DNA from: Basidiobolus meristosporus CBS 931.73
Taxonomy: Eukaryota > Fungi > Basidiobolomycota
Assembly (NCBI GenBank): GCA_002104905.1
Contig: MCFE01000512.1
Coordinates: forward strand, 1 to 64,000
Reading direction: 5' to 3'
Length of the DNA stretch: 64,000 nt
Position numbers and translations under genes: made by a program. Within the stretch, counting starts at the first letter, position 1, and every line of letters starts with the position of its first letter. Shown here piece by piece: positions 5,956-26,582 of the stretch. The notes under the pieces are model-generated. The model saw only the letters and a list, made by a program, of their open reading frames with translations. It ran no database searches and was not told the origin of the DNA.

Positions 5956-8900
5956 CTGACTTACTTTGTCTTCAGAGTTGTTTGATCTTGCACTGCCTTG
6001 TTGTGGGCAACTTATAGTGCAATATTACTATATTATGATATTATCCTTTGATGTTATGTATGGACAACAAATATTGAAAGAAGGACATGCAACAGTGCAC
6101 TAAAGGCATGCACATATTTGACTGCTCAATATCATCCATATAATACCTTCCTCTAGTAACAATGCCAAGAAATCTTGCAGTTTCTATCATGTATGCATTT
6201 CTCATGGACAGCATCAGCTCTGAAGTTTTATGTGCACATTCATATTATGACCAGGCTAACAAAAGAGCTCCTTATGCACCATTGGTAGCTACTCTTCAGT
6301 TGATGATCAATTTTGTGCACATTGATTGTATTCTGGTCATAAATACCACATCTGAGCATTACAGGTATCAGAGCACTCATCTTATAATTGCTATACCTCT
6401 GATATGACATATGTTTGTGAGTATGTAGGTGTTTTGGAGTCTTTGATGTGACTACAAAGTAGTTTGCTTTGGTACTGAGCTGAGAGAGAATCTCTAGGTG
6501 ACATTATTTCTTTAGTCATACACTTGACTGTCAGAGTGCATTCAACCAGGCTTTGTGACAAGGAAAGTTAAAGGCCTGCTGATAATGCCTCTTTTGTTGC
6601 TTGTTACAGGTGCTTACTTGTATCCTTGTGTACTTTCAGTGGCTGTCCCTTGAGTTGAAGCCTAGGTACTGAGGTACTAGATGGAGTTCTGGCTAAACAT
6701 GCTCTATCTAATTGCTATAAATGTCAGAGCAGTAAGTACATCTATTACTTAATACTAGTTACAGAATATTTGAGTGAAAATACATATGTGTATGACAAAG
6801 TCCATTATTATCCACAAGACACTTAACTCTTTTGGAGGAGCTAGATATATATTTATCTCACTGACCATCAAAAGCTACTTTACTCCAAGTTCATTGGAAG
6901 CATTGGGTGTCATATATTGACAGTGTAGGAGAAAGAGCCCAGAAGCTGCCAACCAATGGCAATTTGATGATCTACTGATTTTATGTAAGGAGCTCTCAAT
7001 AAAACTTGTGAGGTTTTGCTGCAAGCATAAGGATGCACATATAAATCTCTGATGTATAGTTTCTCTACTTTTTGCTAGAAGCTTAGAGAGTATAGATGTA
7101 TGTTCACCTAAAGTCTCTTAAGGTGTGGATATGTAAGAAGATAGGAAGAAGAGCAAATTACAGATTCTGCCATATTCAAGTCCCATAAGAAATACTGCAT
7201 TCAAGTACATCTGCAATCCACAGAGTGACTGATGGAGGAACATCAAGTACAGTAGACAAGAAGTGAACAAGTATCCCTTTGGCAATGAGAAGCACAACAG
7301 CCTCAGTAAATGTGTAGTAAGTCAAATAAGGCAAGGCCTGGCTTGGCACAACAAACAAGTATTACTTCTGAAGACAACCATATCAAGGTATGTCAGGTAA
7401 CTCTTGCATGCCAGCCAACTTAAATGCCTTTTCAAAAGTAACTTACACAAAAAGGAGTGGGATTACACTCATACAGGGGACCAGAATGGAGTAGGAAAAG
7501 GAAGCTTATTAGCCAGGAGTCTAGGAGTATTTTGAGATATTAAGCAGATACACTTTGCCAAGTGATGGCAGCTATATGTACATTTGTAAAAGGCATACTT
7601 TAGCAGCAATGCAAGGCATACAGTAAGTTTACAAGTATCACACTAAGAAGCCACATGTTTGTGGTATTAGGACTGTAACCACTGCAAAGCACTGCCAAGT
7701 TTTGTACCACATCAGACAGTCTAGTCAGCAATACTATTACAATGCCTACATAAGTCAAAGGAGAGCAGCACAGGTTTGTTCTTGCTAGTACTGCAGTGGT
7801 GTCAATGTGGGATCCTGATGGCAAATATGGATTGGATCCACCTGCAAGACCAAATTATTTTTTATACGGTCAAAATAGGTTGCAAACTTAGCCCTAAAAC
7901 ATCACTGACTCCTGCAAGTAGAATTTAATTGTTAAAGTCCTGAATGCTAGTTACCTTTACTTCCTTCACCCAATGAAAAAGAATATCTTGGAAAAGACCA
8001 AGCATACTAGAACCTGGGAGCATACTGCACTGTATGACACAGTATGGCACCATAAGGCTACAATCACTCAGTTGTACAATACATAAGCAGGAATTCTTTG
8101 CAGTGGTACTCATGTATTCAAGGTTGAACTATAATTTGTTTATTTGCTCCTCTTAGTGGTGCATAACTATCCTTTATGATGGATGTCTACTTGGATGGAT
8201 ACACTGAGCATTAACTAGAATCTTGATTATTTGGCCTAGCTTACTATTCTCTCATAACTTCACTGCTACCAGAATCATTGATTATGAATACTGTTCTTTA
8301 CAAGTTTCTTTATAAATACCACAATGTAGCTTCTGCTTGGGTAGTGCCCATCCTAATACTGATGTCTTCCAGCTTTGCACTTATGGCTCCCTGGCTGACT
8401 ATCAACATGTTCTTGAGAGGTCTATTGCCTCTTGGTTTAACATCCCTGCCACTTAGCAACTGAGAATTTATAGCATTGCTAATATATTCCTTTAGTGTTT
8501 CAATTATAAACTGACATTTACCTACTTGCCTGGCTCCTGAATATTGCATACAGAACAGGACATATGTAGATCACCTGGCTTTTGGGTCCTAATAATCTAA
8601 GAGCACACTGGCCACAAGACAATGGCATGGCAGATATGATGGCATCCTATATATTGGTACACTCAACTTTGAAATATTTTGCAGCTTCTTAAATAACTGT
8701 TATCTTCAAGTTGGGGTCTTGATGTATGCTTCATAGCCTCATGCCCCATTGCTGTGATAAGCACTTCTATGAGCTTAATTTATGGCCACATTGTCTCACA
8801 CAAATGAATATGTAATTCTCATGCATTGTCAGGTAAAAAAATAGCATCACAGTACCACTTGTGATTATTCCTTGCAGCAAAACTACTGGGATGTCTACTA

Positions 8901-9749
8901 GGGATGGTATTTGCTCAAAGGGCTTGGTTGAGGGAGAAATTTGTTGTGAGTATATTGCAAATTAATACACCATTGAAAGGCTTGAAGGCTTTTAGGCAGG
9001 CAACAAGATGCCATGAGTACTTCACATATAGGGGTAGCTACTCAGAGTGGTTGGTTATGTGAGTCTCATGTCTAGATATCTATCTGGAAAGAGCTTTGGT
9101 TTTAGATTGTCAACCTCCAAGAACTTCAAGTCAAGGCTTGTTTCTGAAAGGCCTTGAATTCAGGTCTCAGATGTTTAGAGCATCAGGCCTTGGTTTTAGT
9201 CTGACAGAGCCACAAATACAGGTTTGGCCATTACAAGCCCAATGTCAAGGCTTTTTCTAATGCAATCAGTGAGCTGCAGTACTTGATAGATGTGTGCCTC
9301 AAGTTGAGACACCTAAAGAGTGGAATCCTACATTAAGGACTTTTGCAAATACAGACATCAAGACAAGGCTCCCATTGGACAGGCACCTCCAATCACTACT
9401 TTTGCAAGTAAAAGCCTCACATCCCAGCCCTCAGTGGATGTGGGCCTGAAGTTAGATTTCAGCATAAAAGAGTCTTCATTGGGATTTTTTAGTCACTGAG
9501 GCTTGTGCTTTCAAACTATAGGAATATTGAAGCCTCAGGTTGAAGGCCTCTGAAGTCCACAGTTTGAGGCTATGTATCTCAGCTGCATAGAGAGCAGTAT
9601 TGTTGTTTGTAACAAACAAGAGTCTTATATGGCAATTGTAGGTAGTAATGAGCCTAAAGATACAGATCCCAGGCATTGACTCTTGGGGATAGACAGAAGA
9701 GCTGATATCAGGTTCCAGGCAGGCCCGGGCCTGAGTAAGAAGGTAAAGA

Positions 9750-9925
9750 CAGTGCATCCAGGTATGCCAAATATTTCCACATTGTTATGGATCAGCCTGC
9801 GCAATATAGGACATACTCCATAGCAGATAAAGACACCCATGATATTGATGGATGCTCTAACCAAGATACACAGTACACAGAGCCCATGAAAGATGCCTTA
9901 TATGGCAATGAGTCTATGGAATGAA
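9750..9925 (+). pseudogene. Family-B 3' relic
   Basis: Encodes SASRYAK...IVMDQPAQYRTYS...GCSNQDTQYTEPMKD, matching the B C-terminus. Confidence 0.75.
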
Positions 9926-10287
9926 CTTAAAGCCATTCAAGTTGCGTTGATTATATATTTCTTGCTTAATATGTAGTAGCAGAAGTATGATCCATGCCAG
10001 CACAAGAATAAGGGTAAGGCTAGAGCAGAATAAAGCGGACCCGCAATATCAGCCAGTAGTACCTTTCTGAGTAGTCAAAATGGATAAGTCAGCTGGCGCA
10101 GATAGCTGATACAATATCTGGTCAAGTTCCTGAGGGCTGTAAAACAATGGACTCCAGTATTTCGGCATATATGGCATTGTGCGGAGACTGCTCTACTTGC
10201 TAATTGCTTACATGAATAGGAGTAGTAGTGAATACGTGATCCATTAGCCTATTTATTGTGGCGGGATCACAATAGTATTAAGCCTAT

Positions 10288-10600
10288 TCATATCATTAGC
10301 TGTCTCTGTATCTACGTCTACGGTAACATGATGTCTGATTGTCATCTTCATTCGAGTCTTGGTTTTCATCCTTGTCGGGAGTAAATGATTGCACATATGT
10401 TGACGTAGATGGTTGGAAAGTGCCTGAGCATTTTGTGCGGAGTTAGTTTAAACATTGTCCAACCAGGGATGGCATCGATGGTTCAATCTCATGGTCTACT
10501 TATTGGTTGTCATGTGTAGCTATGGGTGTTGCGAAATACACACCGAATAGGATGAAGTGATAAGAAAAAAAGCGGAAATTGATGACAGTTGAGTCCCATG
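10288..10600 (-). pseudogene. Family-C relic (C* subtype)
   Basis: Colinear with C genes (GTATCTACGTCTACGG...GATGGTTGGAAAGTGCCTGAGC). Deleted, with a degenerate 5' end. Confidence 0.75.
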
Positions 10601-11230
10601 TTGATAGCTATTCTAGGTGCCCAATTATCAAGCAATCCACAGCCAATTGATCCACGTACTTCATTGCTTCAACAATCTTCCATCTATTGCTCGCCACGAT
10701 AGCTCACCACCATTCCATTTTAGTAGTTTATCTGTTATTATTCGTAATTTTGTGGGAACAAAGTGAGGAGTCATTACAAGATTGTTCATGATGCTGTGAG
10801 CATGAAGGTTTTGACAGAAGTATTCTTATTGCTTGTCCTACGCTGTTTCTTCCTGATATCAGTTGGTGTAATGTGTTGGATAGCCTACAGAGATAGCGAT
10901 TTTGTGATGGGATTTATTATGACATCAACAAAAATAAATAAACAATCCTCTTCAATTTTGACCTTGCTATACCACCTTGGAAGGGACAAACCAAAATGTC
11001 TCATACTACGCCTTTTCAAACTATGGCTTGAGGTGAGCACACAGGAATGGCTTCGGTCTTACGTAGTTCTTGATTTCATAGTTTTAGAATGCTAAGCTAA
11101 TCTGGTTATAAAGCAACCTGTAGCAATCTTTGTGAGTGTTTTGGGATATCTTCACCAGCCATCAGTCGATAGTATACTGAGCCAGATTTACGATGCATTG
11201 CATCAACCACCTTAGGTAGGTTTAGCAAAA

Positions 11231-11340
11231 ATGCAACTCTCCATCACTTCATACATCGCCTCTACCCAATTGACCTCTATTGCACCAGATAAATCTTCAA
11301 GTCGGAACATTAACCGAGGGCTGTGTTGATTTGAAATTAT
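11231..11340 (+). pseudogene. A*-type signal-peptide relic (old A-like paralogue)
   Basis: AAAATG CAA CTC TCC ATC ACT... gives MQLSITSYIASTQLTSIAPDKSSS, resembling the A N-terminus. Homologous relics occur at 14276, about 18140, about 24340 and about 31590. Confidence 0.55.
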
Positions 11341-11406
11341 AGAGTCATAAGAGTAGTGATAGCCAAGGGTATCAATGTGTATTCATCATAAAATTATCAC
11401 AACTAT

Positions 11407-11750
11407 ATGGATGTGAATGAGGGCAAAGATGAAGGCGAAGGTGAGGACTCGATAGATGACACTTCAACTCAGCCAGAGTCATCCTACAACATGACAAACT
11501 GCAATATAGCAGATATGCAGCCAAGACAGGCCTTGTTGGACAGAGTGAACGCTCACTCATCCAGTGATGCTGATGCCCTGTCGAACTCCAATCAGTTTGA
11601 CCAAGCGCAGGTTATCGACCAAACCCTCTATCAGCCTAAGCAGCAACAGCCCCTAGATCATCATCACCCAGCCAGCCACCCGTAGCCATGTTGGACGCCA
11701 GAAGTACAAGAGATCTGCGCATAAGTGCTTCAAGAACAGATACATTGAAT
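11407..11750 (+). pseudogene. Family-A pseudogene, 5'-truncated and frameshifted
   Basis: ORF 11407-11685 starts at MDVNEG with no signal peptide. An extra base after QQQP shifts the tail out of frame. Confidence 0.85.
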
Positions 11751-12084
11751 AAATAAATATGACATTTGGCCACCTTAGATTAATATGAAACATCATCAGC
11801 CGTGATTCGTGAATTACCATACTACAGCTGAAATATCACAAGTATATATGTATATATTGGTGTATGTATCAGTTTATTTATCGTACATTAATCATGTAGA
11901 CTACGCGATATCAATGTGATGGAGTCGACAATATTAGAGAGAATGCTGATTTTCAATCTGATAAAGTGTGAGTTCATCAAAGTTAACTAACTATTGCTAC
12001 CATCAATGTTGTAACCATGTTATAATGGTTCCCATGCTATATATTCCCGAGTGTACTTGGCAATGGACTTAGTAGTTCTCAAAG

Positions 12085-12663
12085 ATGCGCGCATTCATTG
12101 TATCCTTGACCTTGGGCCTTGCTTCTCTTCAGGCCACCATTGCTGCTCCAGTCCCATGCTCCGAATCATGCAACCGTGAGCATAGAAGAGTCCGTTATCG
12201 CAGGTATTCATGCTCGGACCAAGCAAGCAACTGCTACCAGCAAGTCCAGGTTCAGCCCACTGTTGAAACGCCAAACGTCCAAGTGCCATTGTTGCGTCAG
12301 GTGTTCACCACCGTGACCAGAAAGCATGACAATCTGAACACTGCCAACGCCAACAGTGACAAGAGTCTCGATGTTCAGTTTCAAGCAGGCCCTAGCCTCG
12401 AAGTAGAAGGCTCAGCCAGCGCATCCGAGTACGCCAAACAGAAGGGTGCTGAACACTCCGAAGATGGCTCTGGTTACCCTATTGTTGTGGTTCAGCCTGC
12501 ACAAGATGAGACATACTCCACACCAGTAGTGGACACCCAATGCATCGAAGGATGCTCTGACCAAGATACACAGTACTCTGAGCCCATGGTAGATGTTCAA
12601 TGTGGTGATGACTGTGCTAATCAGGACCCACAGTATACCGAGCCCATGGAAGACACTCAATGA
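12085..12663 (+). CDS. Family-B secreted protein, 192 aa
   Basis: Signal-like MRAFIVSLTLGLASLQATIA, 8 Cys, HRRVRYRRY block, two acidic 20-aa C-terminal repeats. AATAAA downstream. Confidence 0.9.
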   Translation: MRAFIVSLTLGLASLQATIAAPVPCSESCNREHRRVRYRRYSCSDQASNCYQQVQVQPTVETPNVQVPLLRQVFTTVTRKHDNLNTANANSDKSLDVQFQAGPSLEVEGSASASEYAKQKGAEHSEDGSGYPIVVVQPAQDETYSTPVVDTQCIEGCSDQDTQYSEPMVDVQCGDDCANQDPQYTEPMEDTQ

Positions 12664-13294
12664 CCCGACGACTGCACTTGAGCCCAAATGCAATAAAGAT
12701 CCATTATCCATTTTATTTTTCGCCTCATATGTGAGCAGAAATATAGCCATTAACAGCATGGGAGCAAAGAGCGTTTGACAAACTTAAAACCAAGCCAATT
12801 TCCACACTTCACTCTGATGATCCGAAGTCCAGTCACCAATTCAGGAGAAGGGTATACTATATTATTGAACTAACTTGAGTAAAATCAATCCTATGTTGAT
12901 AGCTATTCTATGTGGCCAATCATCAAACAATCCACAACTACTCACCACTATTCCATTTTAGTAACTTATTCGTTATTATTCGCAATTCAGAGGGGACACA
13001 ACCAAAATAATTCACACTGTCATGTGAGGAGTTGTTAGATGTTCTGAGCATAAAGTTTTAACGTCGAATATGCCTGACCGAAAGGCACTGCGTATCCATA
13101 TCTATGTTTGGTTATTTCGGTTGATGCTCATTCCACTCATCCCTGTGGTCACATCTACGCTGTTTTTTCCTGATATCAGTTGGTGTAATCTTATTTGCAG
13201 AAGAAATGTGCGTGTTTTATAGCATGCAGAAATAGCGATTATATGATAGGATTTATTATGAATGCCAAACCAATGTTTACATGATCCGATTGAG

Positions 13295-13717
13295 TCAAAA
13301 GCGGCCGCTGTATCTACTTCTACGGTAGCGTCGTTGACAACGTTTGCACGATGGCTGATCGTCGTCGTCACTCGAGTCTTGAGTATCATCCTCATCGGGA
13401 GTAATTGATTGTACATATGTCGGTGCAGATGGTTGGTACAATGTCTGATCTACTTGCTGCACTTGCTCAAATTGATTCTGGTTGGAAAGTGCCTCAGCGT
13501 TCTGTGCAGAATTAGTCTGAGCGTTGTCCAACAATGGATAGGCGTTCGGGGACTCCAGTTGATAGTATATTGGTGTATATGACACTAATGGTTCTTTGTC
13601 GAAGTCCACTGGGACACCCTGGTCTACTTGCTGGTTGTCATATGTTGCAATGGGCGATGCATAAGATGCACCGAATAGGAATACTAAGGCGGATAGAATG
13701 CGGAAAGTGCGTTGCAT
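13295..13717 (-). CDS. Family-C secreted protein, 140 aa
   Basis: The start conserved in all copies is the ATG of MQRTFRILSALVFLFGASYA; the ORF track uses an upstream non-ATG start. N/Q core, D-rich block, CKRC, R/Y tail. Confidence 0.9.
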   Translation of the reverse strand: MQRTFRILSALVFLFGASYASPIATYDNQQVDQGVPVDFDKEPLVSYTPIYYQLESPNAYPLLDNAQTNSAQNAEALSNQNQFEQVQQVDQTLYQPSAPTYVQSITPDEDDTQDSSDDDDQPSCKRCQRRYRRSRYSGRF

Positions 13718-13754
13718 GTTGGCGCCTGATGACATACTGGAAGGCAAACAGTTG

Positions 13755-13762
13755 CTTTTATG
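13755..13762 (-). promoter_or_regulatory. TATA-like box of C genes (CATAAAAG)
   Basis: About 40 nt upstream of the ATG and similar in the intact C copies. Confidence 0.45.
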
Positions 13763-14275
13763 TATGGTTTGCTAGATTCATCAGCGATCATCAGCAACCA
13801 AACCCAGTTTACTAAATTATGAAGCAAAGGTGAGTAAAGTTAATCAGCATTTCACTTTCATTGCAATGATCAGTGAATAGGTGTTGATTAACACCGTAAT
13901 CCCGGCGACCAATCACTTCAGTACATCAAGAAAAATAAATAAACATTCGTCTTCAATTTTGAGCTTGCTATACCACTTTGGAATGACAAACGCGGTAGTG
14001 AAGGGACAAACTAAAATGACTCATACTACGCCTTTTCAAGCTATGGCTTGAAGTGAGCACACAGGAATCGCGTCGTTCTTGCGTAGTTCTCGATTTCATC
14101 GTCGAAGGCCACCAAGCTACTCTGATTATATAGTACCCTGCAGCTATTTTTATGAGTATGTTGGGATTATGAACGAATTAACATCTTCACCGGCCATCAG
14201 TCGATAGTATACTGAACTAAATTTACGATTTAGCATAATGCATTGCATCGACCACCTCAAGTCCGCTTAGCAAAA

Positions 14276-14345
14276 ATGTAACTCGCCATCACTTTGCTGG
14301 CTTCATATATCACCTCTATCCAAGCGATCTCTATTGCAGCAGATG
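14276..14345 (+). pseudogene. A*-type signal-peptide relic
   Basis: ATG TAA CTC GCC ATC ACT TTG CTG GCT TCA TAT ATC... gives M*LAITLLASYITSIQAISIAADE; codon 2 is CAA-to-TAA. Confidence 0.6.
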
Positions 14346-14478
14346 AACCTAGAGTTGCATTGATTTGAGATCGTAGATTCATAGGGATAGTGATTGCTAA
14401 GGGTATTAATGTGTACCTATCACTATGACTATCAGCATGTGGCTTTCCAAATCTTCAATGATGTAGCTACTTTTCCTT

Positions 14479-14760
14479 TTGGCCATCGTTGTTGCTCCAA
14501 TTCCACGCTCCGAATCATGCAATCGCAACCATAAAAGAGTGCATTATCGTAGTTCGTCATGCTCCGATCGAGCAAGTAACTGCCACCAGCAAGCCCGAGC
14601 TCTGCCAACTGTAGAGACTTCGAATGCCCAAGTACGATTGTACGTTGAAGGATGCGTTATCAGGATATACAAAACACTGAGCCCATGGAAGTTGCTCAGT
14701 TTGGCAATGACTGTGCTAATCAGGACTTACTGTATGCTGACTTTATGGACGACACTCAAC
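14479..14760 (+). pseudogene. B*-type relic (internally deleted old B paralogue)
   Basis: AIVVAPIPRSESCNRNHKRVHYRSSSCSDRASNCHQQ... is joined by a deletion to remnants of the C-terminal repeats. Confidence 0.8.
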
Positions 14761-14956
14761 GTACCGACAACTGCACTTAATTCAATAAATCTCGATTATC
14801 CATATCATTTGCTCTTAAAGCCAATCTAACTTGATTGCTAATAGCTAAACCAGGTAGTTAGTTGATGGGCAACAAAAGCAGGACATAGCATGTGAATTCC
14901 TGGCCTCAAGTGAGTCTGATACAGGGTGTAGTATAGTAGACTATGCCAAATACCAC

Positions 14957-14963
14957 TATAAAG
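14957..14963 (+). promoter_or_regulatory. TATA box of A genes (TATAAAG)
   Basis: About 40 nt upstream of AAAATG and conserved before the A copies at 24852 and 32104. Confidence 0.5.
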
Positions 14964-14997
14964 TGAGCTTACGACTGGTTTTACGATATTCATCAAA

Positions 14998-15552
14998 ATG
15001 CAGCTTACTCTCACTTTGCTCGCTTTGTACTTTGCTTCTATCCATGCATTCCCTGCCACAGAAGATACCTCTTCTCAGGTGAGCTACGGTGACAATTTGT
15101 GCGGGGAGCAAGTAAGTCCTTGCTACCCAGAAACTCAATCGCCTGCAGATGACTATCAGCCGGAACAGGACGAGGGTGATCACTATATGGATGAGAATGG
15201 GGGTGAAGATGAAGGCGAAGGTGAAGATTCAATGGATGGCACTACAACTCAGCCAGAATCATCCTACGAGATGCCCAACTTCAATATAGCCGACCTGCAA
15301 CCAAGACAGGCCTTGTTGGACAGAGTGAACGCTCACTCATCCAGTGATGCTGATGCTCTGTCGAATTCTAATCAGTTTGACCAAGCGCAGGTTATCGACC
15401 AAACCCTCTATCAGCCTAAGCAGCAACAGCCCCAGATCATTATCACTCAGCCAGCCACCCATAGCTATGGTGGAGGCCAGAAGAAGTACAAGAGGTCTGT
15501 ACATAAGTACTTCAAGATCAGATATTTCAGTGGGAATCGATACATTGATTAA
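14998..15552 (+). CDS. Family-A secreted protein, 184 aa
   Basis: Signal-like MQLTLTLLALYFASIHA, Cys pair, D/E/G-rich block, N/Q core, K/Y/R tail. AATAAA directly at the stop. Confidence 0.9.
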   Translation: MQLTLTLLALYFASIHAFPATEDTSSQVSYGDNLCGEQVSPCYPETQSPADDYQPEQDEGDHYMDENGGEDEGEGEDSMDGTTTQPESSYEMPNFNIADLQPRQALLDRVNAHSSSDADALSNSNQFDQAQVIDQTLYQPKQQQPQIIITQPATHSYGGGQKKYKRSVHKYFKIRYFSGNRYID

Positions 15553-15833
15553 ATAAACATTTCATTTGGTCACCCTATATTAAAATGAAACATCATCAGC
15601 CGTGGTTCGTGAATTACCGCACTACTGCTGAAATATCAAAAGCATATGCGAATATATTAGGGTATATATTGGTGTATTTATCAGTGTATTTATCGTGTTG
15701 TAACCAAATAAAGTGCGCGATATCAATGCGATTGAGCCGATGATGGCAGAGCGAATGCTAATTTTCAATCTGATAAAGTTAACTAACTATTGCTACCATC
15801 AACGTTGTAACCATGTTATAATGATTCCCATGC

Positions 15834-15840
15834 TATATAT
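15834..15840 (+). promoter_or_regulatory. TATA-like box of B genes (TATATAT)
   Basis: GCTATATATTCC lies about 45 nt upstream of AAAGATG in every B copy. Confidence 0.5.
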
Positions 15841-15880
15841 TCCCGAGTGTACTTGGCAATGAACTCAGCAGTTCTCAAAG

Positions 15881-16459
15881 ATGCGTACATTCATTGTATC
15901 ATTGATCTTGGGCCTTGCCTCTCTTCAAGCCGCCGTTGCTGCTCCAGTCCCATGCTCCGAATCATGCAACCGTGAGCATAGAAGAGTCCGTTATCGCAGG
16001 TATTCATGCTCAGACCAAGCAAGCAACTGCTACCAGCAATCCCAGGTTCAGTCCACTGTTGAAACGCCAAACGTCCAAGTGCCATTGTTGCGTCAGGTGT
16101 TCACCACCGTGACCAGAAAGCATGACAATCTGAACGCTGCCAACGCCAATAGTGACAAGAGTCTCGATGTTCAGTTTCAAGCAGGCCCTAGTCTCGAAGT
16201 AGAAGGTTCAGCTAGCGCATCCGAGTACGCCAAACAGAAGGGTACTGAACACTCAGACAATGGCGCTGATTACCCCACTGTTATGATTCAGCCTGCACAA
16301 GATGAGACATACTCCACACCAGTAGTGGTCACCCAATGCATCGAAGGGTGCTCAGACCAAGATACACAGTACACTGAGCCCATGGAAGATGTTCAATGTG
16401 GCGATAACTGTGCTAATCAGGACCCACAGTATACTGAGCCCATGGAAGACACTCAATGA
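15881..16459 (+). CDS. Family-B secreted protein, 192 aa
   Basis: Intact paralogue of 12085-12663. Confidence 0.9.
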   Translation: MRTFIVSLILGLASLQAAVAAPVPCSESCNREHRRVRYRRYSCSDQASNCYQQSQVQSTVETPNVQVPLLRQVFTTVTRKHDNLNAANANSDKSLDVQFQAGPSLEVEGSASASEYAKQKGTEHSDNGADYPTVMIQPAQDETYSTPVVVTQCIEGCSDQDTQYTEPMEDVQCGDNCANQDPQYTEPMEDTQ

Positions 16460-17152
16460 ACCAACGACTGCACTTGAGCCCAAATCCAATAAAATTTCAT
16501 TATTCATGTTATTTTTCGCCTCGTATGGGATAGCAGAAATATAGCCGTTACCATCAAGAAAATAAGGGTATTTTACAAACTCAACACCATGCCAATTTCC
16601 GCACTTCCCTCTGATAACCCGAAGTCCAGCGACCAATCCAGGAAAAGGGTAAGAAACGTCTTGAAGTACTGCTTGAAGGTCATGGGTAGCTTGTTCAATA
16701 GGTTTTATGTGGGTTTAGTCAATATGGAAATCGGGTCTCCTTGAGCATATCACCATTCCAAGAAGTTCTAGCATGAGTCCGCTATTATAGAGGGTAGGAT
16801 ACATGATAAATAAGGAGAATTCGGTGTGTGTCAAATCCAATAGTCTGGTGCTTTTGACTTATATTCACTGGTACCAGCAGAGTGAGAAAGTACCAAAGCC
16901 CAACTATTGCTTACTACCATTACCAGCACATAACTAATACGCACTACAGACGAATGCTTCTTATTGTAATTGAGAAAATTGGTGCTTGATCGGCTCTTTC
17001 CCTTACATTAATATCGGTTAAATACTCGCCGTTGTTCCACCCATCCCTGTGGTCATGTCTCTTTTGTGACTTTTTTTCCTGGTATTAATTGTCAGAAACT
17101 GGAGTGATGTCGGTTATATATTACATTATCTTATTTATTAAACCTATTCATA

Positions 17153-17587
17153 TCAATAGCTGTCTCTGAATCTACGCCTACGGTAGCGTTGTTGACAACG
17201 TTTACACGATGGTTGATCGTCGTCGTCACTCGAGTCCTCAGTGTCATCCTCGTTGGGTGTAATTGATTGCACATATGTCGGCGCAGATGGTTGGTACAAT
17301 GTTTGATCTACTTGCTGCACCTGGTCGTACTGATTCTGGTTGGAAAGTGCCTGAGCGTTCTGTGCAGAATTCATCTTCACATTGTCCAACAATGGATAGG
17401 TGTCTGGAGACTCTAGTTGATAGTATGTTGGTGTATATGGCACTAATGGTTCATTGTCGGCATTGCCGCCAAAGTCCACTGGGATACCCTGGTTTACTTG
17501 CTGGTTGTCATACGTTGCAATGGGCGATGCGTAAGATGCACCGAATAGGAATACTAAGGCGGATAGAATGCGTAAAGTGCGTTGCAT
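17153..17587 (-). CDS. Family-C secreted protein, 144 aa
   Basis: Intact from the ATG of MQRTLRILS. Confidence 0.9.
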   Translation of the reverse strand: MQRTLRILSALVFLFGASYASPIATYDNQQVNQGIPVDFGGNADNEPLVPYTPTYYQLESPDTYPLLDNVKMNSAQNAQALSNQNQYDQVQQVDQTLYQPSAPTYVQSITPNEDDTEDSSDDDDQPSCKRCQQRYRRRRFRDSY

Positions 17588-18139
17588 GTTGGCGCTTGAT
17601 GACACACTGGAAGGTAAACAGTTGCTTTTATGTATGGTTTGCTAGATTCATCAGCGATCATCAGCAACCAAGCCCAGTTTACTAAATTATGAAGCAAAGG
17701 TGAGTAAAGTTAATCAGCATTTCACTTTCATTGCACTGATCAGTGAGTAAGAGTTGATTAACATCGTAATCCAGGCGACCAATCACTTCAGTACATGAAG
17801 AAAAACAAATAAACATTCGTCTTCAATTCTGGGCTTGCTATACCACTTTGGAATGACATACGCGGTAGTGAAGGGACAAACTAAAATGACTCATACTACG
17901 CCTTTTCAAGCTATGGCTTGAAGTGAGCACACAGGAATGGCTTCATTCTTACGTAGTTCTTGATTTCATAGTCGTAGAACGCTAGGCTACTCTGGTTTTA
18001 TAACAACCTGTAACAATCTTTGTGAGTGTTATGGGATCATGACTGAATTAATATCTTCACCAGCCTTCAGTCGATAGTATACTGAGTTGAATTTACGATG
18101 TAGCATTATGCATTGTACCAATTAGCTTAGCTTAGCAAA

Positions 18140-18625
18140 AATGTAACTCACCATCACCTCTGTCCAAGTGATCTTCCAGTGTAGCAGACGAATCTTCGAG
18201 TTGTGTTGATCTGAAACTGAAGAGCCGTAAGAATAGTGATTGTTAAGGGTATTAATGTGTATTTATCACAGCACTTCAACTGCTAGTTTCTAATGCCCCG
18301 ACCGAGCAAGTGACTGTTAACAGCAAGTCCAAGTTCTGCATACTGTTGAAACGTCGAATGTCCAAGTGCCATTATTATGTCAAGTGTTCACCACTGTTAC
18401 CAAAAAACATGGCAATCTGAGTACTGCTAACGCTAATAGGGAAAAGAGTCTTAATGCCAAGCTGGCCCTAGCCTCGAAGTAGAAGGTTCAGCCAGCGCAT
18501 CCGAGTACGCCAAACTGAAGAGTGCTGAGCAATCAGACGATGGCTCTAATTTCCCATTGTTGTGACTTAGCTTGCACAAGATGAGACATACACTACACCA
18601 GTAGTAGACACCCAATGCGTTGAAG
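18140..18625 (+). pseudogene. A* and B relics
   Basis: AAAATGTAACTC... relic followed by stop-containing B sequence (VETSNVQVPLLCQVFTTVTKKHGNLSTANAN; SASEYAK). The full A gene is deleted from this unit. Confidence 0.7.
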
Positions 18626-18984
18626 GATGCGCTGATCAAGATACTGAAAGGAATACAAGAGATCGGCTCAGATATTCTAGTGGAAATAGACACAAGGAAC
18701 ATCATTTCACTTGACCACCTTATATTAAAATGAAACATCAGCATTGATTCGTAAATCACTATACTACAGCTGGAATATCAAAAGCATATGTGCATTTATT
18801 GGTGTATTTATCAGTGTATTTATCCTCCTGTAATCATGCAAACTACGCGATGATGGTAGACAGAATGCTAATCTGATCAAAGTTAACTAACTATTGCTAC
18901 CATCAATGTTAAAACCATATTATACTGGTTCCCATGCTATATATTCCCGAGCGTACTTGGCAATGAACTCAGCAGTTCTCAAAG

Positions 18985-19563
18985 ATGCGTACATTCATTG
19001 TATCCTTGATCTTGGGCCTTGCCTCTCTTCAAGCCGCCGTTGCTGCTCCAGTCCCATGCTCCGAATCATGCAACCGCGAGCATAGAAGAGTCCGTTATCG
19101 CAGGTATTCATGCTCGGACCAAGCAAGCAACTGCTACCAGCAAGTCCAGGTTCAGCCCACTGTTGAAACGCCAAACGTCCAAGCGCCATTGTTGCGTCAG
19201 GTGTTCACCACCGTGACCAGAAAGCATGACAATCTGAACACTGCCAACGCCAATAGTGACAAGAGTCTCGATGTTCAGTTTCAAGCAGGCCCTAGTCTCG
19301 AAGTAGAAGGCTCAGCCAGCGCATCCGAGTACACCAAACAGAAGGGTGCTGAACACTCAGACGATGGCTCTGGTTACCCCATTGTTATGGTTCAGCCTGC
19401 GCAAGATGAGACATACTCCACACCAGTAGTGGACACCCAATGCATCGAAGGATGCTCTGACCAAGATACACAGTACACTGAGCCCATGGAAGATGTTCAA
19501 TGTGGCGATGACTGTGCTAATCAGGACTCACAGTATACTGAGCCCATGGAAGACACTCAATGA
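18985..19563 (+). CDS. Family-B secreted protein, 192 aa
   Basis: Intact paralogue. Confidence 0.9.
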   Translation: MRTFIVSLILGLASLQAAVAAPVPCSESCNREHRRVRYRRYSCSDQASNCYQQVQVQPTVETPNVQAPLLRQVFTTVTRKHDNLNTANANSDKSLDVQFQAGPSLEVEGSASASEYTKQKGAEHSDDGSGYPIVMVQPAQDETYSTPVVDTQCIEGCSDQDTQYTEPMEDVQCGDDCANQDSQYTEPMEDTQ

Positions 19564-20206
19564 ACCAACGACTGCACTTGAGCCCAAATCCAATAAAGTT
19601 TCATTATTCATGTTATTTTTCGTCTCATATGTGATAGCAGAAATATAGCCATTACCAGCATGGGAACAAGAGCATTTGACAAACTCAACACCACGCCAAT
19701 TTCTTCCCTCTGATGACCCGAAGTCCAGCTACCAATTCAGGAGAAGAGTAAGAAGCTGGTTAAGCTTGGCTATGCACGTGTTTAAGTACTGCTCGTAGGT
19801 ATTGGGTGGCTTATTTAATAAGCTCAACCCGGGCCTAGTCAATATGGAGATAGGGCATCCTAGAGTGTATCGCTATCTCAAGAAGTCCAACTATTACTCA
19901 CTACCATGAGCGCACATATAACATGCACCACAGACGAGTGATTCTTATTATAATTGAGAAATTTAGCGCTTGATCGGCTCTTTCCCTTACTTCAATCTCT
20001 GTTGATACTCGCCATTATTTCACCCATCCCTGTGGGCACATCTCTTGTGTATCATATTTGAAAGCTTGTTTACAGAAGAATTGGGTGTACCTGATAGCCT
20101 ACATGGACAGGGACACTGGAGTAATATCGATTGTATGATACATTAACCTATTTATTATGCTGGGATCACAATAGTCATAAAATGTAGAAAGGCCAACAAC
20201 CTGTTC

Positions 20207-20637
20207 TCATCGATAGCTGTCTCTGTATCTACGTCTACGGTGGCGTCGTTGACAACGTTTACACGATGGCTGATCGTCATCATCACCAGAGTCTTGGTCT
20301 TCATCCTTGTCGGGAGTCAATGATTGCACATATGTCGACGCAGATGGTTGGTACAATGTCTGATCTATTTGCTGCATACTGATTCTGGTTGGGAAGTGCC
20401 TGAGCATTCTGTACGGAGTTAGTTTGAATATTGTTCAACAAGGGATAAGTAATTAGGGACTCTAGCTGGTAATCTGCCAGCGCATATGATATTAATGGTT
20501 CAGTCTCATAGTCCACTTGGACACCCTGGTCTACTTATTGATTGCCATAGGTAACAATAGGCGATGCATAGGATACACCGAATAGGAATACTAAGGTAGA
20601 TAAAATGCGTGGATAAAATTCGGAAATTACGTCGCAT
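20207..20637 (-). pseudogene. C*-subtype pseudogene
   Basis: ATG at 20637. A 13-nt insertion (ACGCATTTTATCT) in the signal-peptide region shifts the frame, and there is a second shift in the core. Confidence 0.8.
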
Positions 20638-21119
20638 ATTGGCACTTAGTTACACACTGGAATACAAAAAGTTGCTTTTGTTTTTATCAACAATCATCAG
20701 CAGCCAAAGCTCAGTTGATAGCTATTCTATGTGGCCAATCATCAATAAAAACAATCCACAGCCAATTGAACCTATGTATCATCGATCTACGTATTTCATT
20801 ACCTATACCATCATCCATTTATTGCTATCCACGATTGCTCACCACTATTTCATTTTAGTAGTTTGTTCAATATTGCTCGCAAATTGTAGGGTACAAAACC
20901 AAAATGATTCACACTATTGTTTAAGGGTTCATTACCAGTATGTTCATGATGCTCATTCCACTCATCCCAGTGGTCACGTCTCCACTGTTTCTTTCGGATA
21001 TCAGTTGTTATAATCTTGTTTGCAGAAGAAATGTGTGTGTTTTATAGCTTGCAGAAATAACGATTATATGATGGGATTTATTATGAATGCCAAACTAGTG
21101 TTTACATGATCTGATTGAA

Positions 21120-21554
21120 TCAAGAGCTGCCTCTGTATCCACGTCTACGGTAGCGTCGTTGACAACGTTTGCACGATGGCTGATCGTCGTCGTCACTCGA
21201 GTCTTGAGTGTCATCCTCGTCGGGAGTAAACGATTGCACATATGTCGGTGCAGATGGTTGGTACAATGTCTGATCTACTTGCTGCACTTGCTCAAATTGA
21301 TTCTGGTTGGAAAGTGCCTGAGCGTTCTGTGCAGAATTAGTCTGAGCGTTGTCCAACAATGGATAGGTGTCTGGAGACTCTAGTTGATAGTATGTTGGTG
21401 TGTATGACATTAATGGCTCATTGTCGGCATTGTCTTTAAAATCCACCGGGATGCCCTGGTCTACTTGCTGGTTGTCATACGTTGCAATGGGCGTTGCATA
21501 AGATGCACCGAATAGGAATACTAAGGCGGATAGAATGCGGAAAGTGCGTTGCAT
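21120..21554 (-). CDS. Family-C secreted protein, 144 aa
   Basis: Intact from the ATG of MQRTFRILS. Confidence 0.9.
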   Translation of the reverse strand: MQRTFRILSALVFLFGASYATPIATYDNQQVDQGIPVDFKDNADNEPLMSYTPTYYQLESPDTYPLLDNAQTNSAQNAQALSNQNQFEQVQQVDQTLYQPSAPTYVQSFTPDEDDTQDSSDDDDQPSCKRCQRRYRRRGYRGSS

Positions 21555-21844
21555 GTTGGCTCTTGATGACACACTGGAAGGCAAACAGTTGCTTTTATGT
21601 ATTGTTTGCTAGATTCATCAGCGATCATCAGCAACCAAACCCCGTTTACTAAATTATGAAGCAAAGGTGAGTAAAGTTAATCAGCATTTCACTTTCATTG
21701 CAATGATCAGTGAATAGGGGTTGATTAACAACGTAATCCAGGCGACCAATCACTTCAGCACATCAAGAAAAATAAATAAACATTTCTCTTCAATTCTGGG
21801 CGTGCTATACCACTTTGATATGACAGGACGAGGGTGATCAATAT

Positions 21845-22210
21845 ATGGATGAGAATGAGGGCGAAGATGAAGGCGAAGGTGAGGACTCGATGGATGGCAC
21901 TACAACTCAGCCAGAGTCATCCTACAACATGCCAAACTTCAATATAGCCGACATGCAACCAAGAGAGGCATTGTTGGACAGAGTGAACGCTCACTCATCC
22001 AGTGATGCTGATGCTCTGTCGAACTCTAATCAGTTTGACCAAGCGCAGGTTATCGACCAAACCCTCTATCAGCCTAAGCAGCAACAGCCTCAGATCATCA
22101 TCACTCAACCAGCCACCCGTAGCTATGGTGGAGGCCTGAAGAAGTACAAGAGGTCTGCACATAAGTACTTCAAGATCAGATATTTCAGTGGGAATCGATA
22201 CGTTGATTAA
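21845..22210 (+). pseudogene. Family-A copy lacking promoter and signal peptide (open from an internal Met)
   Basis: A deletion junction at 21823-21825 fuses C-upstream DNA to A coding sequence. Confidence 0.8.
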
Positions 22211-22554
22211 ATAAATATATCATTAGGCCACCTAATATTAATATGAAACATCATCAGCCGTGCTTCGTGAATTACCACACTACTGCTGAAATATCAAAAG
22301 CATATGTGTATATATTGTTATATATATTGGTGTATTTATCAGTTTATTTATCGTACTGTAACCATAGAAACTACGCGATATCAATGCGATTGAGCCGATG
22401 ATGGTAGAGCGAATGCTGCTTTTCAATCTGACAAGGTGTGAGTTCATCAAAGTTAACTAACTATGGCTACCATCAGTGTTGTAACCATGTTATACTGGTT
22501 CCCATGCTATATATTCCTGAGTGTAATTAGCAATGTGCTCAGTAGTTCTCAAAG

Positions 22555-23133
22555 ATGCGTGCATTCATTGTATCCTTGATCTTGGGCCTTGCCTCTCTTC
22601 AAGCCACCATTGCTGCTCCAGTCCCATGCTCCGAATCATGTAATCGTGAGCATAGAAGAGTATGTTATCGCAGGTATTCATGCTCGGACCAAGCAAGCAA
22701 CTGCTACCAGCAAGTCCAGGTTCAGCCCACTGTTGAAACGCCAAACGTCCAAGTGCCATTGTTGCGTCAGGTGTTCACCACCGTGACCAGAAAGCATGAC
22801 AATCTGAACACTGCCAATGCCAACAGTGACAAGAGTCTCGATGCCCAGTTTCAAGCAGGCCCTAGCCTCGAAGTAGAAGGCTCAGCCAGCGCATCCGAGT
22901 ACGCCAAACAGAAGGGTGCTGAACACTCAGACGATGGCTCTGGTTACCCTATTGTTATGGTTCAGCCTGGGCAAGATGAGACATACTCCACACCAGTAGT
23001 GGACACCCAATGCATCGAAGGATGCTCTGACCAAGATACACAGTACACTGAGCCCATGGAAGATGTTCAATGTGACGATAACTGTGCTGATCAGGACTCA
23101 CAGTATTCTGAGCCCATGGAAGACACTCAATGA
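22555..23133 (+). CDS. Family-B secreted protein, 192 aa
   Basis: Intact. One Arg-to-Cys change (RRVCYRR) is consistent with CGT-to-TGT. Confidence 0.9.
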   Translation: MRAFIVSLILGLASLQATIAAPVPCSESCNREHRRVCYRRYSCSDQASNCYQQVQVQPTVETPNVQVPLLRQVFTTVTRKHDNLNTANANSDKSLDAQFQAGPSLEVEGSASASEYAKQKGAEHSDDGSGYPIVMVQPGQDETYSTPVVDTQCIEGCSDQDTQYTEPMEDVQCDDNCADQDSQYSEPMEDTQ

Positions 23134-23378
23134 CCCAACGACTGCACTTGAGCCCAAATCCAATAAAGTTCCATTATTTTTCGCCTCATATGTAATCCCT
23201 GTGGTCACGTCTCCGCTGGCTCCTCCTGATGTCAGTTGGTGTAATCTTGTTTGCAGAAGAAATGTGTGTGTTGGATAGCTTACAGTAGTAGCGATTATTT
23301 CACAGGATTAATTATGAATGCCACATACGATAGGATTTATTATGAATGCCAAACTAGTGTTTACATGATCCGATTGAG

Positions 23379-23813
23379 TCAAAAGCGGCCTCTGTATCTA
23401 CGTCTACGGTAGCGTCGTTGACAACGTTTACACGATGGCTGGTCGTCATCGTCACTCGAGTCTTGAGTGTCATCCTCGTCGGGAGTATTTGATTGCACAT
23501 ATGTCGGCGCAGATGGTTGGTACAATGTCTGATCGACTTGCTGCACCTGCTCGTATTGATTCTGGTTGGAAAGTGCCTGAGCGTTCTGTGCGGAATTCGT
23601 TTGAGCGTTGTCTAGCAATGGATAGGCGTCTGGGGACTCTAGCTGATAGTATGTTGGTGTATATGACATTGAAGGTTCATTGTCGGCATTGCCACCAAAG
23701 TCCGCTGGGATACCCTGGTCTACTTGCTGGTTTTCATACGTTGTAATGGGCGATGCATAAGATACACCGAATAGGAATACTAAGGCGGATAGAATGCGGA
23801 AAGTGCGTTGCAT
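23379..23813 (-). CDS. Family-C secreted protein, 144 aa
   Basis: Intact. Confidence 0.9.
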   Translation of the reverse strand: MQRTFRILSALVFLFGVSYASPITTYENQQVDQGIPADFGGNADNEPSMSYTPTYYQLESPDAYPLLDNAQTNSAQNAQALSNQNQYEQVQQVDQTLYQPSAPTYVQSNTPDEDDTQDSSDDDDQPSCKRCQRRYRRRRYRGRF

Positions 23814-24851
23814 GTTGGCTCCTGCTGACACACTGGAAGGCAAACAGTTACTTTTATGTATGATTTGCTAGATTCATCAGCGATCATCAGCAACCAAACC
23901 CAGTTTACTAAATTATGAAGCAGAGGGGAGTAAAGTTAATCAGCATTTCATTTTCATTGTAATGATCGATGAGTAAAAGCTGATTAACACCGTAATCCAA
24001 GCGACCAATCACTTCAATAAATAAACACTCTTCAATTCTGCGCCGCCGCACGATTTGGGAATGACATTAGCGGTTGTGAAGAGACAAACCAAAATGACTC
24101 ATACTACGCCTTTTCAAGCTATGGCTTGAGGTGAGCTCACAGGAATGGCTTCGTTCTTACGTAGTTCTTGATTTCATAGTCATAGAATTGTAACCTGCTC
24201 GGGTTATATAGCGACCTGTAGCTATTTTAATGCGTATTATGGGATTATGAATGAATTCATATTTTACCAGTCATCATTCGGTAGCATTCTGAGCTAGATT
24301 AACGATTTAACATCAAGCGTTGCATCAACCACCACAAGATGATACAGCGCCACTATCCAAGGGATCTCTAATGCCGCAGATGAACTTCAAGTCGAAACAT
24401 GAACCTAGATTTGCGTTGATTTCAAATTGTAGATTCATAGGAATAGTGGTTGCTAAGGGTATTAATGTGAATTTATCACTGCGACTATTCACATATGGCT
24501 TTCCAAATGCTCAATGACGTAGCTACTTTTTCTTTTGGCGGTCGTTGCTGCTTCAATACACTGTGCCCACGGAATATGCTCAGTGTTGTAATGATTGTGC
24601 TTAGCAGGACTCACCGACTGCAGACTTTATGGAGGACACTTAATGTACCGATAAGTGCACTTAATTCAATAAATCTCGATTATCCATATGAGCCCATATC
24701 TTCACAAGTACTTAGTGGAAAGTCAACCACGGCTGGACATGGCATGTGAATTCATGGCTTCAAGTGAGTCAGATATAGGATGCAGTATAATAGACTACGC
24801 CAAATACCACTATAAAGTGAGCTTACGACTAGTTTTACGCTATTCATTAAA

Positions 24852-25406: not shown

Positions 25407-25753
25407 ATAAACATGTCATTTGGCCGCCTAATATTAATATGAAACATCATCAACCGTGATTCGTGAATTACCACACCAAAGCTGAAATTTTATCAAAAGC
25501 ATATGCGTATATATTGGTGTATTTATCAGTGTATTTATCAGTGTATTTATCGTGCTGTAACCATATAAACTACGCGATATCAATGCGATTGAGCCGATGA
25601 TGGTAGAGCAAATACTGCTTTTCAATCTGACAAAGTGTGAGTTCATCAAAGTTAACTAACTATTGTTGCCATCAGTGTTGTAACCGTGTTATAATGGTTC
25701 CCCTGCTATATATTCCCGAGGGAATTCAGCAATGTACCCAGTAGTTCTCAAAG

Positions 25754-26272: not shown

Positions 26273-26582
26273 ACCAACGACTGCACTTGAGCCCAAATCC
26301 AATAAAGCACCATTATTCATTTTATTTTTCGTCTCATATGTGATAGCAGAGATATAGCCATTAACAGCATGGGAACAAGAGCGTTTGACAAACTCAACAC
26401 CACGCCAATCTCCATATTTCCCTCTGATGACCCGAAGTCCAGCCACCAATTGAGGAGAGGGGTAAGAAACTGGTAAAGCTTGGCTATGCACGTCTTTAAG
26501 TCCTGCTTGGAGGTAGTGGGTGGCTCATTTAATAAGCTCAACGAGGGCTTAGTCAATATGGAGATCGGACATCCTAGAGTGT

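What the first reader, a model, noticed from the sequence alone, without database searches (positions are those of the whole stretch)
15310..17420. All three families carry a 35-residue core that aligns without gaps
Seen: A LLDRVNAHSSSDADALSNSNQFDQAQVIDQTLYQP, C LLDNAQTNSAQNAQALSNQNQFEQVQQVDQTLYQP and B LLRQVFTTVTRKHDNLNTANANSDKSLDVQFQAGP are each 35 aa from LL to P. A and C are clearly homologous. B shares L1, L2, L16, N20, Q30 and P35 with both, plus V5 and D14 with A. The core is the best-preserved part even in the old pseudogenes at 2.1-3.2 kb. Inference: the N/Q/S-rich, small-residue, helix-poor composition fits a beta-strand or amyloid-like polymerisation module, possibly forming an A/B/C hetero-oligomer from one ancestral gene.
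Basis: partly seen in the sequence, partly recalled or inferred. Interest (0 to 1): 0.75.

Follow-up and report, generated by a model that had tools for sequence, protein, structure and literature searches.

The report
Two secreted-protein motifs, not one core
Three neighbouring genes of the frog-gut fungus Basidiobolus encode small exported, unstructured proteins: families A and C truly share a 35-residue motif, B carries a different one, and in a sister species both motifs sit in one protein, so they look like two partner modules of a family found only in this genus, with no tested function.

Summary
The stretch is one A-B-C cassette of a tandem array (about 2-34 kb of the window) in Basidiobolus meristosporus CBS 931.73. 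The three quoted 35-residue strings exist, though the quoted B and C strings come from other copies. Each is the best-conserved part of its family.

A and C cores are homologous (hhalign 98.3%, E 1.3e-14). The B core is not detectably related to them. Every shuffled partner gives a better window.

B shares with A only the signal peptide and a Cys loop. Five uninterrupted B. ranarum ORFs carry the B motif followed by the A/C motif. So there are two modules in one modular family, known only from this genus: all 24 hits among 1.84 billion representatives are Basidiobolus.

AlphaFold2 predicts disorder. I found no support for amyloid, no RNA data, and no verdict from the complex test. The function is untested. 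My best guess is an abundant extracellular matrix or wall material assembled or anchored through the two motifs.

The scan found the same cassette on another contig (s1-199493), with a similar reading.

The parts
14998..15552 (+). Gene A (184 aa). Order of parts: signal peptide, C-x6-C loop, acidic tract (net -17), motif M2, Q/P-rich stretch with IIIT, basic Lys/Arg/Tyr/Phe tail (+7).
   Evidence: The ORF is identical to a protein in the public collection. dN/dS is below 0.3.
15313..15417 (+). A core = motif M2 (35 aa, from LLD to YQP).
   Evidence: Exact match to the quoted string. Homologous to the C core. 19 of 35 columns are invariant across two species.
15881..16459 (+). Gene B (192 aa). 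Order of parts: signal peptide, basic Cys-rich N-terminus, motif M1, acidic C-terminus with C-x3-C repeats.
   Evidence: ORF, present in the public collection. Family alignment, charges.
16085..16189 (+). Conservation continues to about 16255 (residue 125).
   Evidence: It is not related to M2 by hhalign or by shuffles.
17153..17605 (-). Gene C. The annotated start is the Met at 17587 (144 aa). Order of parts: signal peptide, N region, motif M2, acidic tract, basic tail with a CxxC motif (two Cys two residues apart).
   Evidence: ORF. The 144-aa form is returned as P0065. Charges.
17288..17392 (-). C core = motif M2 (local copy, 5 residues different from the quoted string).
   Evidence: tblastn places A residues 106-140 here. 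21 of 35 columns are invariant.
2103..33890 (.). The whole array of intact, truncated and decayed A, B and C copies. B copies recur every 3.05-3.8 kb.
   Evidence: tblastn map with stop counts and ORF list.
12085..12663 (+). Intact B copy.
13295..13747 (-). Intact C copy.
18985..19563 (+). Intact B copy.
21120..21584 (-). Intact C copy.
21845..22210 (+). A copy without the signal-peptide end (121-aa ORF).
22555..23133 (+). Intact B copy.
23379..23843 (-). Intact C copy.
24852..25406 (+). Intact A copy.
25754..26272 (+). B copy ending early (172 aa).
27384..27836 (-). Intact C copy.
28109..28462 (+). A copy without the signal-peptide end (117-aa ORF).
28807..29385 (+). Intact B copy.
30680..31144 (-). 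Intact C copy.
32104..32658 (+). Intact A copy.

Best explanation
The stretch is one cassette of a tandemly amplified superfamily of small secreted, intrinsically disordered, net-acidic proteins (pI about 4.1-4.4). Each carries a short, strongly basic Arg/Lys/Tyr patch. The superfamily is known only from Basidiobolus.

It holds two conserved short modules, not one. M2 is the A/C core, from ALLD.V through ALSNSNQFDQAQ to DQTLYQP. M1 is the B core, from PLLRQVFTTVTRKH to KYQAGPSLE.EG. A and C share M2. B carries M1 and shares with A only the signal peptide and a C-x6-C loop.

In B. ranarum, single uninterrupted ORFs have the order signal peptide, (Cys loop), M1, variable linker, M2, then an A-type or a C-type tail. 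A, B and C are therefore split or module-loss derivatives of a two-module architecture, or that architecture is a fusion of them.

Shown: the genes are real and under purifying selection, strongest in the modules. M1 and M2 are distinct. They occur together in one chain. The family is seen in this genus only.

Inferred, at about 0.3-0.35: these are abundant extracellular matrix, wall or spore-surface proteins. M1 and M2 would act as short assembly or anchoring motifs that fold on binding, to each other or to a wall polymer. The variable acidic, Met-rich or His/Lys-rich linkers and the basic tails would supply charge-driven cohesion or ion binding.
For: - Organism and annotation.
- A/C core homology.
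- B/A N-terminal homology.
- No similarity between the B core and the A/C core.
- Two-module ORFs P0040, P0064, P0087, P0090 and P0092 each translate without interruption from one ORF.
- P0040 matches B (E 6e-20) and A (E 3e-22). P0090 matches B (E 3e-17) and C (E 6e-8).
- In every one of them M1 comes before M2.
- Selection: dN/dS 0.08-0.19 in the cores against 0.14-0.34 elsewhere. The cores have the most invariant columns.
- Disorder.
- Charge blocks.
- Amplification: dozens of copies, with clusters of 32, 23, 22 and 12 member sequences, and the array map.
- Seen in this genus only: all 24 hits of the exhaustive profile search are Basidiobolus.
- Variable linkers (Met-rich in P0086, His/Lys repeats in P0087).
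- Language-model look-alikes are secreted matrix proteins such as cuticle proteins, casein, enamelin and MEPE. All score below 0.8, so they are leads only.
Against: - There is no expression or protein evidence: no RNA run was listed.
- There is no structural or binding evidence for either motif. The monomer models are unconfident, and the complex job gave no verdict.
- Fusion versus fission cannot be ordered without an outgroup.
- A very old internal duplication that gave rise to both M1 and M2 cannot be excluded. Both begin with a Pro or Ala followed by LL, and the fixed-register p is 0.005-0.04.
- In B. ranarum the A and B families are amplified in separate arrays. Fixed 1:1:1 dosage is therefore not a general feature.
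- Conserved basic tails next to KR sites fit a peptide-precursor reading equally well.
Confidence: 0.55

Rival explanations
1. One ancestral 35-residue core persists in A, B and C, with B much diverged, and acts as a beta-strand or amyloid-like polymerisation unit that forms A/B/C hetero-oligomers.
For: - 8 of 35 and 7 of 35 identities in a gap-free register, with fixed-register shuffle p of 0.005 and 0.04 and profile column-permutation p of 0.018.
- Both modules start with LL after a Pro or Ala.
- N+Q content is 20-40%.
- The N-terminal third of M1 is an aggregation hot spot on an approximate scale.
- The C-terminal half of M1 alternates polar and hydrophobic residues.
- M1 and M2 occur in one chain, which fits an old internal duplication.
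Against: - After correcting for the choice of register, the match is ordinary.
- hhalign finds nothing between the cores.
- The A/C core has no hot spot and no strand-like periodicity. It is 11-17% charged and only 35 residues long.
- AlphaFold2 shows no strands.
- There is no Pfam curlin or other amyloid family match.
- M1 and M2 have different periodicity patterns.
Confidence: 0.1
2. A, B and C are precursors of secreted cationic peptides. An acidic pro-region neutralises a basic Arg/Lys/Tyr/Phe peptide, which a Kex2-like protease releases at KR (after A residue 166 and C residue 130). The conserved cores would be pro-domain, sorting or chaperone motifs, or are themselves the released products.
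For: - Signal peptides, acidic tracts (-17, -15, -9) and basic patches (+7, +3, +7), with KR at A 165-166 and C 129-130.
- The A tail is conserved between species.
- Earlier notes of this scan describe other Basidiobolus arrays with an acidic front and a cationic tail (s1-190795, s1-202207). These are leads, not tested here.
Against: - The cores, not the tails, are the most conserved parts.
- The KR site of A is KK in B. ranarum.
- B has no KR site, and its basic patch lies directly after the signal peptide.
- The proteins stay net acidic overall.
- No modifying-enzyme genes lie in the window.
Confidence: 0.2
3. M2 is a PIR-like wall-anchoring motif. A conserved Gln in the stretch Q-[VIL]-[IV]-D-Q-T-[LI]-Y-Q becomes linked covalently to wall beta-1,3-glucan, tethering an acidic disordered chain to the cell wall.
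For: - Q, D, Q and Q are invariant in M2.
- In yeast and Candida PIR repeats (consensus QIxDGQ[IV]Q), the three Gln and the Asp are needed for wall incorporation (PMC12359137).
- The proteins are secreted, contain Cys and are abundant.
Against: - The Pfam PIR model does not match.
- There is no DGQ, and the spacing differs.
- Each chain has one copy, whereas C. albicans Pir1 needs two repeats.
- This reading gives no role to M1.
Confidence: 0.1

Closest known systems
The same cassette on another contig of this genome (scan finding s1-199493)
   Same: A three-gene cassette of exported, unstructured, charge-patterned proteins found only in Basidiobolus and read as parts of one modular family. 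My independent tests reach the same reading.
   Different: This report adds three things. The B core is not the A/C core. Five B. ranarum ORFs hold both motifs. In B. ranarum the A and B families sit in separate arrays.
Yeast and Candida PIR cell-wall proteins (Pfam PF00399)
   Same: Secreted proteins with a short Gln/Asp-rich conserved motif whose Gln and Asp residues are functionally essential (PMC12359137), plus Cys-containing regions.
   Different: No Pfam match, no DGQ, one motif per chain, and a wall linkage that is untested.
Functional amyloids: curli CsgA/CsgB repeats (PF07012), Ustilago repellents, hydrophobins (from my own knowledge)
   Same: Abundant small secreted proteins. Curli units are N/Q/S-rich and of similar length.
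   Different: No Pfam match. There is a single unit per chain rather than a stack of repeats. The A/C core is hydrophilic and charged. There is no hydrophobin Cys pattern, and nothing predicts beta structure.
Secreted disordered matrix proteins (caseins, enamelin, MEPE, insect cuticle proteins)
   Same: Signal peptide, acidic disordered chains and tandem gene clusters. They are the nearest clusters by language-model features.
   Different: The scores are below 0.8, which shuffled sequences also reach. There is no homology, and this is a different kingdom.
Acidic-propiece / cationic-peptide precursors and Kex2-processed fungal secreted peptides (from my own knowledge)
   Same: A signal peptide, an acidic tract, a basic tail and a KR site in A and in C.
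   Different: There is a single site rather than repeated units flanked by KR. The site is not conserved in B. ranarum A, and the most conserved part is not the basic tail.

Membership tests
One A/B/C superfamily (this locus) | The A and C cores are homologous | tested here: met
   BLASTP E 5e-6. hhalign 98.3%, E 1.3e-14.
One A/B/C superfamily (this locus) | The B core is homologous to the A/C core in the gap-free 35-residue register | tested here: not met
   hhalign finds no core match. The register ranks 169th of 23,700 and 408th of 17,380, and every shuffle beats it. The profile score is -3.4.
One A/B/C superfamily (this locus) | Some other link joins B to A and C | tested here: met
   B and A share the N-terminus (hhalign 74.6%, E 2.7e-5). 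Single ORFs carry both motifs.
PIR cell-wall proteins (PF00399) | Match to the Pfam PIR repeat model, or the motif Q[IV]xDGQ[IV]Q | tested here: not met
   No PIR hit at E up to 1 (whole proteins) or up to 10 (cores). The nearest string lacks the Gly and has a different spacing.
PIR cell-wall proteins (PF00399) | Alkali-labile covalent link to beta-1,3-glucan | not testable with these tools
   This needs wall fractionation.
Curlin repeat proteins (PF07012) | Pfam match and several tandem repeat units per chain | tested here: not met
   No hit. Each normal chain has one M2.
Amyloid or prion-like domain | Aggregation-prone or long uncharged N/Q-rich segment | tested here: not met
Only the first third of M1 scores as a hot spot.
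Amyloid or prion-like domain | Cross-beta fibrils, thioflavin T binding | not testable with these tools
   This needs peptides and biophysics.
Hydrophobins | Eight Cys in the pattern with two adjacent Cys pairs, and a Pfam match | tested here: not met
   A and C have 2 Cys. B has 8, but as C-x3-C and C-x6-C pairs. No Pfam hit.
Kex2-processed secreted peptide precursors | A signal peptide plus conserved dibasic sites that release peptides | tested here: inconclusive
   One KR site in A and one in C. It is KK in B. ranarum A, and B has none. Cleavage is untested.

The most novel reading that the evidence does not exclude
M1 and M2 are a matched pair of short motifs that fold on binding each other. 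Through them, separately encoded disordered proteins (B with A or C) would co-assemble outside the cell into a two-component fungal matrix or adhesive. Sister species would then encode the same system either fused in one chain or split across co-amplified genes.
Probability: 0.15. Interest if true: 0.7.

Novelty: new variant of a known kind. Interest (0 to 1): 0.4.

Why it matters
Early-diverging fungi lack hydrophobins and most of the well-studied wall-protein families of Dikarya, so what coats their walls and spores is largely unknown. This family is heavily amplified, known only from this genus, and built from two strongly conserved polar motifs joined by freely varying disordered linkers. 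That makes it a tractable candidate for such a material.

The fused (B. ranarum) and split (B. meristosporus) versions give a natural test of whether the two motifs work together. For the scan itself, the case shows that anchoring a gap-free alignment on a few identities can suggest a shared core where profile and shuffle tests find none.

Tried and rejected
- Complex prediction of A 92-155 with B 60-125: no verdict, score 0.00 against a mark of 0.34. This is evidence neither way.
- RNA runs for 14900-17700: none was listed.
- AlphaFold2 models of A and B were too unconfident (pLDDT 52 and 39) to justify a fold search.
- Profile searches of solved structures with the M2 and B alignments found nothing below E 0.7.
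- Pfam on whole proteins and on cores gave only sub-threshold chance hits.
- The protein atlas gave only scores below 0.8.
- Paper searches on Basidiobolus secretome, transcriptome and proteomics found nothing on these genes.
- Hydrophobic-moment scans: M2 showed no significant helix-like or strand-like periodicity (P 0.22 and 0.52). The first 11 residues of M1 look like an amphipathic helix (P 0.018). The strand-like alternation in M1 was not significant on its maximum (P 0.21).
- The B. meristosporus 'fusion' proteins P0021, P0030, P0033, P0053, P0055, P0059 and P0063 were set aside as probable gene-model joins of neighbouring A and B genes.
- P0017 (L003) needs an annotated intron that bridges a frame break inside the B part. 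I described the broken copies and did not mend them.
Full report
WHAT IS THERE

The window comes from Basidiobolus meristosporus CBS 931.73. The A protein is letter for letter in the public collection, in a cluster whose named members are hypothetical proteins of that strain. Every homologue found belongs to B. meristosporus or B. ranarum.

The finding's stretch holds three intronless ORFs:
- A at 14998-15552 (+), 184 aa.
- B at 15881-16459 (+), 192 aa.
- C at 17153-17605 (-), with the annotated start at 17587, giving 144 aa.

They form one unit of an array that runs from about 2.1 to 33.9 kb. The array mixes intact, 5'-truncated and decayed copies, and B copies recur every 3.05-3.8 kb. Downstream lie a Ty3/gypsy element, a DDE transposase ORF and a 61-bp satellite.

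CHECKING THE OBSERVATION

The quoted A string is at 15313-15417. The quoted B and C strings are exact only in other copies. The local B core (16085-16189) differs by one residue and the local C core (17288-17392, minus strand) by five. The identity counts are correct: 8 of 35 for B/A and 7 of 35 for B/C.

The A and C cores are clearly homologous, with BLASTP 22/35 at E 5e-6 and profile-profile 98.3% at E 1.3e-14 over 39 columns.

The B alignment does not survive testing.
- With the register fixed, shuffling gives p 0.005 (A) and 0.04 (C). But the register was chosen after looking.
- Among all gap-free 35-residue registers it ranks 169th of 23,700 (B/A) and 408th of 17,380 (B/C). Every one of 300 shuffled partners yields a better best window.
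- With family profiles the score in that register is -3.4, ranking 64th of 21,754 and 247th of 16,060.
- Full-length hhalign aligns B with A only over residues 1-55, that is the signal peptide plus a C-x6-C loop (74.6%, E 2.7e-5). It aligns B with C only over a 12-residue basic patch.
- Core-only hhalign with 29 B-type and 66 A/C-type segments gives 8 columns in a different register at probability 0.45%.

The equal length of 35 follows from the chosen anchors. The B module stays conserved to about residue 125, and the A module extends on both sides.

The claim that the cores are the best-preserved parts holds. They have 19, 12 and 21 invariant columns out of 35. Their dN/dS is 0.08-0.19 against 0.14-0.34 for the rest, in window paralogues and in B. 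ranarum arrays.

In the decayed copies at 2.1-3.2 kb the A core keeps 27/35 against 45/119 outside, and the B core 22/35 against 43/85. That A copy belongs to another subfamily, so the contrast mostly records selection before it decayed.

TWO MODULES IN ONE FAMILY

B. ranarum encodes proteins that carry the B-type motif (M1) followed by the A/C-type motif (M2).
- P0040, P0087 and P0092 have an A-like Cys loop at the front and an A-type tail.
- P0064 and P0090 have a C-type acidic tract and a tail with a Cys-x-x-Cys motif.
- P0093 is a partial protein of the second type.

All five full-length genes translate exactly from one uninterrupted ORF: 966, 813, 1086, 771 and 879 bases.

P0040 matches B at E 6e-20 and A at E 3e-22. 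P0090 matches B at E 3e-17 and C at E 6e-8. M1 always comes before M2.

M1 and M2 are therefore separate modules that can sit in one chain, and A, B and C are related as module-loss or split versions of that architecture, or it is a fusion of them. Without an outgroup I cannot say which came first.

In B. ranarum the A-only and B-only families form their own homogeneous tandem arrays, unlike the interleaved cassette here.

One B. meristosporus locus (L003) has an ORF that runs from the second half of a B gene straight into a complete mature A. There is a frame break inside the B part, which the annotation bridges with an intron. I left that break as it is.

WHAT THE PROTEINS LOOK LIKE

Each has a hydrophobic N-terminal signal segment, and UniRef labels two relatives 'Secreted protein'. 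Mature A, B and C are net acidic (-18, -14, -10; pI 4.1-4.4). Each has long acidic tracts and one short basic Arg/Lys/Tyr patch.

AlphaFold2 with the family alignments gives no fold: pLDDT 52 and 39, pTM 0.10 and 0.12, with only a short helix at A 104-111. The atlas model of P0040 is likewise unconfident.

Linkers vary freely between subfamilies. They are Asp/Glu-rich in A, Met-rich in P0086 and His/Lys-repeat-rich in P0087, while M1 and M2 stay fixed.

RANGE

Pfam, PDB profiles and the language-model atlas give nothing significant. An exhaustive profile search with M2 against 1.84 billion representatives found 24 proteins at E up to 0.001. All of them are Basidiobolus.

AMYLOID?

Nothing I could run supports it. 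The A/C core is hydrophilic, 11-17% charged and only 35 residues long. M1 has a hydrophobic first third and an alternating second half, so a small hairpin or a binding strand is conceivable there. None of this excludes amyloid. Only peptides can settle it.

MOST LIKELY MECHANISM

Three features point to an abundant extracellular material rather than an enzyme or a receptor: heavy amplification, secretion, and disorder with charge blocks, together with two polar motifs under the strongest constraint.

I take M1 and M2 to be short assembly or anchoring motifs, binding each other or a wall polymer. Their presence in one chain in the sister species suggests they act together. This functional step is inference, at about 0.3-0.35.

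There are three rivals. The first is a cationic-peptide precursor with an acidic pro-region, since A and C each have a KR site and the tail is conserved; against it, the cores are more conserved than the tails and the site is KK in B. ranarum A. The second is a PIR-like glutamine anchor in M2.

LIMITS

No RNA run was listed. The complex prediction gave no verdict. Signal peptides were judged from hydrophobicity, not with a dedicated predictor. The same cassette was already reported by this scan on another contig (s1-199493) with a similar reading.

Noticed in passing
window 36333-40816: Ty3/gypsy-type retrotransposon on the + strand. It has a gag-like ORF, a zinc knuckle plus aspartyl protease, and a 732-aa ORF with RT, RNase H, integrase and a C-terminal chromodomain.
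   Followed up: partly
window 46636-47163: A 175-aa ORF matching DDE_Tnp_4 (E 5e-23), probably a remnant of a PIF/Harbinger-type DNA transposon.
   Followed up: partly
window 51133-64000: A 61-bp satellite with higher-order periods of 122, 183 and 208 bp fills the last 13 kb or so and coincides with strong negative GC skew. Another note of this scan covers it (s1-212672).
   Followed up: partly
L004 (B. ranarum, 11.7 kb) and L005 (B. ranarum, 8.7 kb): In B. ranarum the A family forms a homogeneous head-to-tail array (eight copies, one of them interrupted) and the B family another (five copies). This differs from the interleaved A-B-C cassette of B. meristosporus.
   Followed up: partly
P0085, P0086 (B. 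meristosporus); P0087 = L006 3001-4086 (B. ranarum): Subfamilies keep M2 but swap the linker. P0085 and P0086 have Met-rich runs (alternating Met and Asp/Asn). P0087 has six or so repeats of a Lys/His-rich unit plus Met/Glu/Pro repeats. These compositions recall metal-binding disordered proteins.
   Followed up: no
L003 26-1127 (B. meristosporus): An ORF runs from the C-terminal half of a B gene into a complete mature A lacking its signal peptide. The B part has a frame break, which the annotation bridges with an intron.
   Followed up: partly
window 21845-22210 and 28109-28462: Two A copies lack the signal-peptide and Cys-loop end but keep an open frame from an internal Met. They alternate with full-length A copies, which suggests a higher-order repeat unit in the array.
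   Followed up: no
window 17263-17685, 27506-27916, 30790-31212 (+ strand): ORFs of 136-140 aa lie antisense to the C genes and recur in several cassettes. They are most simply a by-product of the conserved C sequence and not genes.
   Followed up: no
window 16337-16456 (B residues 153-192): The B C-terminus holds two copies of a unit of about 20 residues, with a C-x3-C pair followed by an acidic stretch ending in YTEPMED. The number of units varies among paralogues.
   Followed up: no
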